A stretch of DNA of 64,000 nucleotides, from positions 294,039 to 358,038 of the IMG/VR virus record IMGVR_UViG_3300017963_000188. One strand, given 5' to 3'. Of the stretch, positions 35,780-36,083 are shown in pieces. A program made the translations under genes and the position numbers. How positions within the stretch are numbered: position 1 is the stretch's first letter; every line of letters starts with the position of its first letter. Below the pieces are notes generated by a model that was not told the origin of the DNA, made no database searches, and was given only the letters and a program-made list of their open reading frames with translations.

Positions 35780-35920
35780 AGGCAGCAGCGTAGAGATCGG
35801 ATACTTCGCTAAAGGAGCGGGTGGTTGCAGGTTCAAGTCCTGCTGTCCTGACTATGGTCAGGACATAGCTCAATTGGCAGAGCACCTAAACGTAACCCGA
35901 TTTCGACTTCTTCTCTGCCT
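35780..35920 (+). ncRNA. Y-RNA-like unit 6 with permuted tRNA-Pro-like body (degenerate anticodon loop, CTA end)
   Basis: TTCGC-TAAAGGA-GCGGG, GCAGG-TTCAAGT-CCTGC, TGTCCTG-A-CTA, CAGGACA-TA-GCTC..GAGC. Confidence 0.82.
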
Positions 35921-35934
35921 TTAACTTTGAAAGG

Positions 35935-36083
35935 AATGAGCAGCAGCGTAGCCAGCGGATACTTCGCATTTGACTATTAATCAAAAGGTTGCAGGTTCGA
36001 GTCCTGTCCGTCCCACCATTTATGGGACGGTAGCTCAATTGGTAGAGAAAAGAATCCCGTTAGCGACCCTTACTCTGCTCATT
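35935..36083 (+). ncRNA. Y-RNA-like unit 7 with permuted tRNA-Lys-like body (anticodon ATT)
   Basis: TTTGA-CTATTAA-TCAAA, GCAGG-TTCGAGT-CCTGT, CCGTCCC-A-CCA, linker TTTAT, GGGACGG-TA-GCTC. Confidence 0.85.

What the first reader, a model, noticed from the sequence alone, without database searches (positions are those of the whole stretch)
35780..36083. Units 6 and 7 have anticodons that do not match their tRNA bodies
Seen: unit 7 has a Lys-type body (GGG/CCC, A73, TTTGA-CT.TTAA-TCAAA arm) but anticodon ATT at 35976-35978 and a mismatch in the D stem. Unit 6 has a Pro-type acceptor (C1-G72, A73) but loop TAAAGGA with no U33, and ends in CTA instead of CCA. T arms and acceptor pairing are intact in both. 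Inference: selection preserves the elbow and acceptor shape but not decoding. This fits non-coding decoys, or anticodon variants that bind but resist a tRNA-Lys-specific nuclease such as PrrC.
Basis: partly seen in the sequence, partly recalled or inferred. Interest (0 to 1): 0.6.

Follow-up and report, generated by a model that had tools for sequence, protein, structure and literature searches.

The report
Phage Y RNAs mimicking whole tRNAs
Units 6 and 7 are not tRNA genes but two of eight Ro60-bound "Y RNA" genes of a giant phage, each built around a circularly rearranged tRNA look-alike (unit 7 is a near copy of lysine tRNA), a known kind of RNA that here keeps an unusually complete tRNA shape, anticodon arm included.

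Summary
However, the units are not stand-alone tRNAs with wrong anticodons. Window 35093-36511 holds eight tandem Y RNA genes, two short and six YrlA-like. They lie directly downstream of a phage Ro60/Rsr gene (TROVE + vWA) and 2.3 kb upstream of an RtcB RNA ligase. The host genome is a 358-kb phage that also carries 49 tRNAs and a tmRNA.

Each long unit has a conserved bulged stem (5' GYGUAG-N7-WUAC, 3' N7'-CG) enclosing a permuted tRNA module in the order hairpin, T arm, closed acceptor stem, D arm. The "anticodon arm" sits where published YrlA RNAs have their "V" stem-loop.

Put back in tRNA order, unit 7 is 64/76 identical, without gaps, to an E. coli tRNA-Lys(UUU). It differs by T34A and a G10·A25 mismatch. 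Unit 6 has no assignable isotype, and its loop lacks U33.

Among 127 Ro60-linked phage units from IMG/VR, 54 carry this hairpin in exact tRNA register. U33 and R37 are each present in 52/54, and 31 different triplets occur. So the loop shape is selected and decoding is not.

This is a new variant of a known kind. The decoy idea is untested and has already been proposed in the literature.

The parts
33210..33286 (+). tRNA-Arg(ACG), a canonical tRNA immediately upstream of the Ro60 gene. It is the only tRNA on this strand of the genome.
   Evidence: ARAGORN; Rfam tRNA 66 bits
33403..35085 (+). Ro60/Rsr orthologue, 560 aa, with a TROVE ring and a vWA domain
   Evidence: Pfam TROVE 2.6e-16 and vWA_Ro60 3.9e-8; PHROG 850 1.4e-55; PDB 9L5Y/9KOP Thermus phage phiLo Ro60 at 2e-36
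35093..35164 (+). Unit 1: short Y RNA (stem plus one hairpin, no tRNA module)
   Evidence: Motif and N7 helix partner; fold
35184..35253 (+). Unit 2: short Y RNA
35271..35402 (+). Unit 3: YrlA-like with no hairpin before the T arm. It has a hairpin after the D arm instead, so the break point differs.
35425..35562 (+). Unit 4: YrlA-like. The hairpin TTCGC/CTTCCAT/GCGAG looks like Gly-UCC. The acceptor is 7 bp followed by U73-CCA.
   Evidence: Rfam YrlA 37.3 bits; ARAGORN calls the re-ordered unit Gly(tcc)
35622..35762 (+). Unit 5: YrlA-like. The hairpin is degenerate. The acceptor is 7 bp followed by A73-CCA.
   Evidence: Rfam YrlA 36.5 bits
35781..35919 (+). Unit 6: YrlA-like Y RNA (whole unit)
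   Evidence: Rfam YrlA 37.5 bits, E 3e-6, below the gathering score of 69. The MFE fold gives a five-way junction, z -3.2.
35805..35821 (+). Unit 6 anticodon-arm-like hairpin TTCGC/TAAAGGA/GCGGG. Its 5' strand is part of the conserved UAC-UUCG motif. The loop (35810-35816) has A at position 33.
   Evidence: one of 2 of 54 homologous hairpins without U33
35827..35883 (+). Unit 6 T arm (35827-35843), closed 9-bp acceptor stem with tetraloop (35844-35865), and UA plus D arm (35866-35883)
35938..36080 (+). Unit 7: YrlA-like Y RNA (whole unit)
   Evidence: Rfam YrlA 30.5 bits over the T-acceptor-D core, and tRNA model 32.5 bits over the hairpin plus T arm
35969..35985 (+). Unit 7 anticodon-arm-like hairpin TTTGA/CUAUUAA/UCAAA. 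The triplet ATT is at 35976-35978.
   Evidence: The same loop occurs in two other phage contigs.
35991..36049 (+). Unit 7 T arm (35991-36007), acceptor 3' strand plus A73-CCA (36008-36018), 5-nt linker, acceptor 5' strand (36024-36030), and UA plus D arm with the G10·A25 mismatch (36031-36048)
36105..36374 (+). Small ORF (89 aa, no family hit) separating unit 7 from unit 8
36380..36511 (+). Unit 8: YrlA-like with hairpin TTGGT/CTCATAC/ACCAA (CAT), a short closed acceptor stem and a vestigial D arm
38815..40128 (+). RtcB RNA ligase
   Evidence: Pfam RtcB 214 bits

Best explanation
Units 6 and 7 are genes for YrlA-type Y RNAs, the non-coding partners of the Ro60 protein encoded just upstream.

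**Shown**
- Each unit's 5' and 3' ends pair into a long bulged stem that carries conserved motifs: GYGUAG, then a 7-bp helix of free sequence, then WUAC.
- Inside the stem lies a circularly permuted tRNA in the order anticodon-arm-like hairpin, 5-nt variable loop, T arm, acceptor stem closed by a loop, UA, D arm.
- The module keeps the tRNA tertiary signature (T and D loops, covarying Levitt pair), so it should fold into the tRNA L-shape.
- The 'anticodon' hairpin is at the position of the published YrlA 'V' stem-loop. It is homologous to a real anticodon arm: unit 7 is 84% identical over its whole length to tRNA-Lys(UUU).

**Inferred**
- The RNAs bind the phage Ro60 ring through the stem.
- They present a tRNA look-alike to tRNA-handling proteins, within an RNA decay/repair module that includes the nearby RtcB ligase and probably host PNPase.
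- The triplet is not read on the ribosome. Only the shape of the loop (U33, R37, A38) is maintained, and the triplet drifts or diversifies.
- Unit 7 (7-bp acceptor, A73-CCA) is predicted to be nicked by RNase P and trimmed to CCA, as M. smegmatis YrlA is.
- Unit 6 (9-bp closed acceptor, CUA, no U33) is a more degenerate copy that probably stays closed.
For: **Locus context**
- The Ro60 orthologue lies directly upstream on the same strand.
- RtcB lies 2.3 kb downstream, the same gene order as Salmonella rsr-yrlBA-rtcBA (PMC7790460).

**Match to YrlA**
- Rfam YrlA is the best non-tRNA hit for units 4-7 (E 3e-6 to 3e-4).
- There are exactly eight copies of the stem motif, all in this array.
- ARAGORN finds no tRNA in the array as it stands. 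After re-ordering the halves it calls tRNAs.

**Comparative data**
- 444 unique units were collected from 216 loci (215 IMG/VR loci plus this window), with a covarying N7 helix.
- 78 of 88 loci that have T-arm units also carry a Ro60-like gene.
- RNAalifold finds compensatory changes in 23 of 28 pairs.
- The Levitt pair is G:C in 26, A:U in 15 and other in 1.

**The hairpin**
- The modal spacer between UAC and the T stem is 22 nt, which equals 5+7+5+5.
- 54 of 127 spacers hold a hairpin in strict tRNA register, against 10.9±2.9 in shuffles. U33 together with R37 occurs in 50, against 1.6±1.2.
- Covariation score is 0.549, against 0.175 when shuffled and at most 0.138 when slid.

**Unit 7 and the literature**
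- Unit 7 against E. coli tRNA-Lys: 64/76 identical.
Against: - Rfam YrlA scores (30-37 bits) are well below the family's gathering score of 69.
- The 5' motif GYGUAG is not the published GNCGAAN0-1G.
- There is no expression or Ro60-binding evidence. Only DNA metagenomes (sediment, seawater) hold the locus.
- No promoter or terminator signal stands out above chance.
- Which helix stacks under the D stem, the hairpin or the Ro60 stem, cannot be decided from sequence.
- The function of bacterial or phage YrlA is itself not established.
Confidence: 0.85

Rival explanations
1. **Anticodon-nuclease decoy or sensor**. The anticodon-arm mimics make the Ro60 RNPs bind host tRNA-cleaving defence nucleases. 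The RNPs would then titrate those nucleases or report their activity to the RtcB repair module. Unit 7 would be the tRNA-Lys bait.
For: - Loop shape is conserved while triplets are diverse, and one array holds different mimics.
- Unit 7 is a near copy of tRNA-Lys(UUU), a frequent nuclease target.
- Unit 7 keeps U36-A-A-U-C|A41 and U16, the determinants of PARIS AriB cleavage (PMC12409363).
- Triplets UUU, UGU and GUU (the AriB target set) make up 13/54 hairpins, against 11.9% of tRNA genes in the same loci (p about 0.01, sequences not independent).
- RtcB and several RNA ligases are encoded in the genome.
- Hughes et al. 2020 proposed competitive inhibition by YrlA.
Against: - There is no functional test.
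- The enrichment is weak and confounded by relatedness.
- Unit 6 lacks U33, and units 3 and 5 lack the hairpin.
- The host and its defence systems are unknown.
- A34 could equally be neutral drift at an unselected position.
Confidence: 0.2
2. **Permuted pre-tRNAs.** As in the red alga Cyanidioschyzon, the outer stem is cut off, the ends are ligated (here by RtcB) into a circle, and RNase P/Z open the acceptor loop. The result would be functional tRNAs.
For: - Re-ordered units are called tRNAs by ARAGORN.
- N73-CCA is encoded in units 4, 5 and 7.
- RtcB is nearby.
- Wang et al. raised this possibility for YrlA.
Against: - The triplets are not usable bacterial anticodons (AUU; AAG without U33).
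- Unit 7 has a D-stem mismatch.
- 7-12 unpaired nt separate the D arm from the stem, with no bulge-helix-bulge motif.
- No bacterial splicing endonuclease is known.
- The phage already has 49 ordinary tRNAs.
- The outer stem is the most conserved part of the family, which argues that it is kept in the mature RNA.
Confidence: 0.04
3. **Neutral relics.** The units are decaying remnants of tandem tRNA genes, and the hairpins have no present function.
For: - The array shows a gradient, from complete (units 7 and 4), through degenerate (units 6, 5 and 8), to none (units 1 and 2).
- The dimeric-tRNA origin model exists in the literature.
Against: - U33, R37 and A38 are kept in 80-96% of hairpins across very divergent phages, while the stems covary.
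- The spacing to the T stem is kept at 4-5 nt.
- The Levitt pair covaries.
Confidence: 0.06

Closest known systems
YrlA Y RNAs of bacteria (Salmonella Typhimurium, Mycobacterium smegmatis; Rfam RF02553; Chen et al. 2014; Wang et al. 2018)
   Same: - Encoded next to Ro60/Rsr on the same strand, and often next to RtcB.
- The ends pair into a Ro60-binding stem.
- The internal module has a T arm, a closed acceptor stem and a D arm in permuted order.
- Conserved UAY precedes a 'V' stem-loop, and the Levitt pair covaries.
- M. smegmatis YrlA, with a 7-bp acceptor, is cut by RNase P and gains CCA.
   Different: - The 5' motif here is GYGUAG, not GNCGAAN0-1G.
- Scores fall below Rfam's threshold.
- The 'V' stem-loop is a full anticodon-arm copy (5 bp, 7-nt loop, U33/R37) followed by a 5-nt variable loop, whereas Salmonella YrlA is described as lacking an anticodon loop.
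- CCA is genome-encoded in three units.
- Eight units stand in tandem.
Phage Y RNA-like RNAs (mycobacteriophages, CcrColossus, Bacillus phage G in Chen et al. 2014; Thermus phage phiLo Yrl1/Yrl2, PMC12135203)
   Same: - A phage-encoded Ro60 with adjacent Y-like RNAs.
- phiLo Ro60 is the closest solved structure.
- Streptomyces phages BRock and Satis carry unannotated arrays of 3-4 such units upstream of their Ro-like genes. One BRock unit is about 83% identical to the unit 7 core.
   Different: - phiLo Yrls are described as stem-bulge-stem RNAs with a CGAA motif and no tRNA module.
- The array here is larger: 8 units, against at most 5 in the 215 other loci sampled.
Circularly permuted tRNA genes (Cyanidioschyzon merolae and relatives)
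   Same: The 3' half lies upstream of the 5' half. The acceptor is initially a closed loop. The transcript ends pair with each other.
   Different: Those RNAs are processed to decoding tRNAs by a splicing endonuclease and a ligase. Here the paired ends form a conserved protein-binding stem and the triplets are not decoding anticodons.
Nuclease-resistant phage tRNAs (T5 tRNA-Lys/Thr/Asn against PARIS AriB, PMC12409363, PMC11464382)
   Same: Phage-encoded look-alikes of host tRNAs that are targeted by defence nucleases. The same isotypes (Lys, Thr, Asn) are frequent.
   Different: Those are functional tRNAs carrying changes at the cleavage site. Unit 7 is not a free tRNA. It changes the wobble base and keeps the AriB site.

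Membership tests
YrlA-type Y RNA (Chen et al. 2014; Rfam RF02553) | Encoded within about 4 kb of a Ro60/Rsr (TROVE) gene, on the same strand | tested here: met
   The array starts 8 nt after the stop codon of the TROVE+vWA ORF. In 78 of 88 comparison loci with T-arm units a Ro60-like gene is present.
YrlA-type Y RNA (Chen et al. 2014; Rfam RF02553) | 5' and 3' ends pair into a stem that carries the Ro60-binding motif GNCGAAN0-1G near the 5' end | tested here: inconclusive
   The stem is present and covaries. The conserved motif at that place is GYGUAG, a related but different sequence. Binding was not tested.
YrlA-type Y RNA (Chen et al. 2014; Rfam RF02553) | Conserved YUAY that begins the V loop, followed by a V stem-loop | tested here: met
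   UAC is invariant in 42/42 aligned units and is preceded by U or A. The hairpin starts directly after it.
YrlA-type Y RNA (Chen et al. 2014; Rfam RF02553) | T arm, then a closed acceptor-like stem-loop, then UA and a D arm, with tRNA-invariant nucleotides | tested here: met
YrlA-type Y RNA (Chen et al. 2014; Rfam RF02553) | Levitt pair 15:48 kept by compensatory change | tested here: met
   G:C in 26, A:U in 15, other in 1. Units 6 and 7 have A:U; units 4 and 5 have G:C.
YrlA-type Y RNA (Chen et al. 2014; Rfam RF02553) | Score at or above Rfam's gathering threshold (69 bits) | tested here: not met
   30.5-37.5 bits. The units are therefore filed as a divergent phage subfamily, not as Rfam-defined YrlA.
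YrlA-type Y RNA (Chen et al. 2014; Rfam RF02553) | Expressed and bound by Ro60/Rsr in vivo | not testable with these tools
   No RNA run holds the locus.
Canonical tRNA gene | Contiguous order: acceptor 5', D arm, anticodon arm, T arm, acceptor 3' | tested here: not met
   ARAGORN finds none in 35090-36520. It finds tRNAs only after the halves are re-ordered.
Canonical tRNA gene | Anticodon loop with U33 and purine 37, and a usable anticodon | tested here: not met
   Unit 6 has A33. Unit 7 has U33 and A37, but its triplet is AUU with A34.
Permuted pre-tRNA (Cyanidioschyzon type) | 3' half upstream of the 5' half, joined through the acceptor ends | tested here: met
Permuted pre-tRNA (Cyanidioschyzon type) | Bulge-helix-bulge junction cut by a splicing endonuclease, followed by circularisation to a decoding tRNA | not tested
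   No such motif was evident by eye at the junction: 7-12 unpaired nt lie on one side and 0-2 on the other. No formal search was run and no processing data exist.

The most novel reading that the evidence does not exclude
Phage Ro60 loci encode panels of Y RNAs that each imitate a specific host tRNA completely, anticodon stem-loop included. These Ro60-tethered mimics would act as baits or sensors for host anticodon nucleases (PARIS AriB, PrrC/RloC, VapC-like enzymes) and feed into RtcB repair. Unit 7 would be the tRNA-Lys(UUU) bait, with an altered wobble base.
Probability: 0.15. Interest if true: 0.8.

Novelty: new variant of a known kind. Interest (0 to 1): 0.5.

Why it matters
The function of bacterial and phage Y RNAs is still open. 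The published picture is of a tRNA elbow mimic without an anticodon loop.

This array, and the roughly 50 homologous phage units found here, show that many phage YrlA-like RNAs keep a full anticodon stem-loop in tRNA register. The loop shape is conserved while the triplets are free. One unit is a near copy of tRNA-Lys.

That has three consequences:
- It supports the proposal that Y RNAs arose from tandem tRNAs.
- It narrows the list of likely partners to proteins that read anticodon arms: nucleases, modification enzymes, synthetases and repair ligases.
- It makes the 'Y RNA as tRNA-nuclease competitor' hypothesis directly testable with defined RNAs.

Tried and rejected
**Rejected**
- TadA link. 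The deaminase at 37180-37635 might have been a tRNA A34 deaminase connected to the A34 loops. It is a dCMP deaminase: ComEB 128.7 bits, phrog_174, TadA only 26 bits.
- Recent copying from the phage's own tRNA genes. Best identities are only 56-59/76.
- 'Pro-type' body for unit 6. Not supported.
- Promoter and terminator scan. Nothing above chance.

**Led nowhere**
- Close relatives for ortholog-level loop conservation. The only near relative is a 100% identical 186-kb contig (L001/L040), so it carries no variation. The megablast search of GenBank phages was empty.
- Expression evidence. Only two DNA metagenomes hold the locus, and read laying was not used.
- E. coli isotype test for units 4, 6 and 8. 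No matches.

**Could not be run**
- Host identification. The host stays unknown.
- Two reviews (PMC6047535, PMC10870794) are not held.
- A first IUPAC pattern had too few specified bases and was replaced by two exact-motif scans.

**Weak results**
- Body-versus-triplet isotype concordance is only weakly above chance (4/22, P about 0.035).
- The enrichment of Lys/Thr/Asn triplets is weak and not corrected for relatedness.

Full report
**1. What is at the coordinates**

ARAGORN finds a single tRNA in the window, tRNA-Arg(ACG) at 33210-33286, and none in 35090-36520. Reading the sequence shows eight tandem units. Seven lie at 35093-36080 and one at 36380-36511.

Each unit opens with GCAGCG(U/C)AG, then 7 nt, then (A/U)UACUUCG. 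Each closes with the complement of the 7 nt, then CG, then a pyrimidine-rich run that pairs with the very 5' end. This motif occurs exactly eight times in the 358,038-bp virus record that holds the window, and all eight copies are here.

Units 1 and 2 are short. Units 3-8 enclose, in this order:
- a T arm
- the 3' strand of an acceptor stem
- a short loop
- the 5' strand of the acceptor stem
- UA
- a D arm

That is a circularly permuted tRNA.

**2. Check of the listed features**

All base-level statements hold.

Unit 7:
- The hairpin TTTGA/CTATTAA/TCAAA is at 35969-35985, with ATT at 35976-35978.
- The acceptor is 7 bp, followed by A73-CCA.
- The D stem has a G10·A25 mismatch.

Unit 6:
- C1-G72 and A73 are present, with CTA in place of CCA.
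- The loop TAAAGGA is at 35810-35816, with A at position 33.

This gives a 9-bp acceptor helix closed by a tetraloop.

The 'Lys-type body' is confirmed by test:
- The 3' half of unit 7 finds an annotated E. coli tRNA-Lys as its best match (locus).
- The re-ordered unit (36024-36049 plus 35969-36018) aligns to that gene without gaps at 64/76 identity, with compensatory changes at acceptor pairs 4:69 and 7:66.
- With the loop masked, the E. coli tRNA-Lys genes score 51 and 49, against 41 for the next isotype among 444 reference tRNAs.
- The phage's own 49 tRNAs reach at most 57/76.

The 'Pro-type' label for unit 6 is not supported:
- The nearest tRNAs are Ile (39) then Pro (34).
- There is no E. 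coli match.
- ARAGORN reads the re-ordered unit as 'Leu(aag)'.

**3. What the units are**

The ORF that ends 8 nt before unit 1 (33403-35085) is a Ro60/Rsr orthologue:
- Pfam TROVE and Ro60-type vWA domains
- PHROG 850
- Closest solved structure: the Ro60 of Thermus phage phiLo, E 2e-36

At relaxed threshold the best Rfam family for units 4-7, other than tRNA, is YrlA 'Y RNA-like' (RF02553), with 30.5-37.5 bits and E 3e-6 to 3e-4. This is below the gathering score of 69.

An RtcB RNA ligase lies at 38815-40128. The locus therefore repeats the rsr / Y RNA / rtcB arrangement of Salmonella (PMC7790460).

The published description of YrlA fits part for part (PMC4201824; 10.1101/312249):
- a 5' motif in a stem formed by the RNA ends
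- a conserved YUAY that begins a 'V' stem-loop
- a T arm, a closed acceptor-like stem and a D arm
- a covarying Levitt pair

**4. Comparative evidence**

No close relative with sequence differences exists in the collections. The only near hit is a 100% identical 186-kb contig.

In these units the 7-nt helix after GYGUAG has a complementary partner followed by CG.
- 128 units contain a T arm.
- 78 of the 88 loci holding them also encode a Ro60-like protein.

A MAFFT alignment of 42 long units (A1) shows invariant G-G-AG, G-UACUU, T-loop and UAG positions. RNAalifold recovers the outer stem, T arm, acceptor stem and D arm, with compensatory changes in 23 of 28 pairs. Position 15 pairs with the base just before the T stem as G:C (26), A:U (15) or other (1). 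Within this array, units 4 and 5 are G:C and units 6 and 7 are A:U.

GenBank Streptomyces phages BRock and Satis carry unannotated arrays of 4 and 3 such units upstream of their Ro-like genes. One BRock unit is about 83% identical to the unit 7 core.

The eight-unit array is the largest seen. The other 215 loci have at most 5 units.

**5. The hairpin is an anticodon-arm copy**

The spacer between UAC and the T stem is most often 22 nt. That is 5+7+5+5: a 5-bp stem, a 7-nt loop and a 5-nt variable loop. The 5' strand of the stem is usually the UUCGN of the conserved motif itself.

| Test | Observed | Control |
|---|---|---|
| Spacers with a hairpin in strict tRNA register | 54 of 127 | 10.9±2.9 (shuffles) |
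| Same, with U33 and R37 together | 50 | 1.6±1.2 (shuffles) |
| Cells of the helix that are paired (36 gap-free units, A2) | 83.9% | not reported per helix |
| Covariation score (A2) | 0.549 | 0.175 shuffled; at most 0.138 slid |

In A2 the two variable pairs show 8 and 15 double changes. A looser test with dinucleotide shuffles gives the same answer.

Among the 54 hairpins:

| Loop position | Count |
|---|---|
| U33 | 52 |
| R37 | 52 |
| C32 | 38 |
| A38 | 43 |

Positions 34-36 take 31 different triplets.

The loop architecture is therefore under selection and the triplet is not fixed. Positions 32, 33, 37 and 38 do not vary randomly, while positions 34-36 do vary.

- Unit 7's loop CUAUUAA is canonical apart from A34, and it recurs in two other contigs. 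Related units with the same stem and T arm carry CUUUUAA and CUCUUAA.
- Unit 6 shares that stem and T arm. It is one of only two of the 54 hairpins without U33, so it is a degenerate member.
- Body isotype and triplet agree only weakly across the family (4/22 against 1.4±1.1). A 'mismatch' is therefore the rule, not a peculiarity of units 6 and 7.

**6. Mechanism**

Shown: the architecture, its conservation and the genomic association.

Inferred from the named literature:
- The RNAs bind the phage Ro60 through the stem and expose an L-shaped tRNA mimic as the effector-binding module.
- Units 4, 5 and 7 (7-bp acceptor plus N73-CCA) are likely RNase P substrates, as M. smegmatis YrlA is. Unit 6 likely is not.
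- The RNP acts in RNA decay or repair with host PNPase (shown for phiLo in vitro, PMC12135203) and the adjacent RtcB.

The genome also carries 49 tRNAs, a tmRNA and several RNA ligases. This fits the jumbo-phage RNA-repair repertoire described by Iyer et al. 2021, who note TROVE proteins with a tRNA-like partner in a subset of jumbo phages (PMC7824862).

Whether the hairpin or the Ro60 stem stacks under the D stem cannot be decided from sequence.

**7. The decoy idea**

It is compatible with the Y RNA identity, but it was not tested here and it is not new (PMC7790460).

One concrete lead emerged. PARIS AriB cuts tRNA-Lys(UUU), Thr(UGU) and Asn(GUU) at U36-A-A-U-C|A41 and also reads U16 (PMC12409363).
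- Unit 7 keeps exactly that site and U16.
- The triplets UUU, UGU and GUU make up 13 of the 54 hairpins, against 11.9% of tRNA genes in the same loci (p about 0.01, not corrected for relatedness).

I rate this reading at about 0.15-0.2.

**8. Steps left out and limits**

The host therefore remains unknown.
- No RNA-seq run holds the locus.
- tRNAscan-SE isotype models were not available. Nearest-neighbour comparison was used instead.

**9. Verdict**

The units belong to a known class, Ro60-associated YrlA-type Y RNAs, which are also known from phages.

New relative to the literature I could read:
- the full anticodon-arm mimicry at the 'V' position across a large phage subfamily
- the near identity of unit 7 to tRNA-Lys
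- the size of the array

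Noticed in passing
window 38815-40128 (+): An RtcB RNA ligase gene lies 2.3 kb downstream of the Y RNA array. This gives an rsr / Y RNA / rtcB arrangement like the Salmonella RNA-repair operon. A further RNA ligase (PF09414 with a PHA02142 OB domain) is at 61030-62076, and a second strong PF09414 hit plus two weak ones lie elsewhere in the genome.
   Followed up: partly
whole genome G000 (358,038 bp); tRNAs at about 92-150 kb on the minus strand, outside the window: The phage carries 49 tRNA genes covering all 20 amino acids, plus a tmRNA (tag ANDNALPMAA). 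The only plus-strand tRNA, Arg(ACG) at window 33210-33286, sits directly upstream of Ro60 and duplicates a minus-strand Arg(ACG).
   Followed up: partly
window 35271-35402 (unit 3), hairpin at about 35357-35372: Unit 3 has no hairpin before its T arm. It has a 6-bp hairpin with a 4-nt loop after its D arm instead. Its permutation break point therefore appears to lie after the anticodon-arm position (43|44) rather than before it (26|27), as in units 4-8.
   Followed up: no
window 35885-35896 (unit 6), 35529-35540 (unit 4), and many homologues in alignment A1, columns 118-137: A semi-conserved UAACGU(A/U) segment lies between the D arm and the 3' strand of the outer stem. Its GUA can pair with the invariant UAC on the 5' side, which would extend the Ro60 stem up to the junction.
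   Followed up: no
window 36105-36374 (+): An 89-aa ORF with no Pfam, NCBIfam or PHROG match is wedged between units 7 and 8. Two more orphan ORFs follow unit 8 (36541-36867 and 36846-37136).
   Followed up: partly
window 37180-37635 (+): A cytidine/dCMP deaminase-fold protein. It was checked as a possible tRNA A34 deaminase because of the A34 loops, but it scores as a dCMP deaminase (ComEB, phrog_174) and not as TadA.
   Followed up: yes
L053 (Streptomyces phage BRock, KX925554.1 102849-104110) and L054 (Streptomyces phage Satis, MH576962.1 85802-88265): GenBank records of cultured phages carry unannotated tandem Y RNA-like units (4 and 3) directly upstream of their Ro-like RNA-binding protein genes. 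In BRock the array follows a tRNA-Asn gene.
   Followed up: partly
window 35946-35968 and 36388-36417 (5' strands of units 7 and 8): Rfam's tRNA model aligns part of the outer-stem 5' strand as a D arm in unit 7, and as acceptor plus D arm in unit 8. The conserved UAG...GG-UUAC resembles U8-A9-G10...G18G19-U-A21. This may be a relic of an upstream tRNA, as the dimeric-tRNA origin model predicts.
   Followed up: no
L003 3450-3578 and L004 3448-3576: Next to two distant phage Ro60 genes, the Y-like unit (GCGUAG...UACUU plus a T arm) gives a weak partial hit to the tmRNA model (24 bits) rather than to YrlA.
   Followed up: no
window 11423-11441: A lone match to the loose stem motif, with a nearby complementary 7-mer, lies inside a long ORF far from the array. 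It was taken as a chance match.
   Followed up: no
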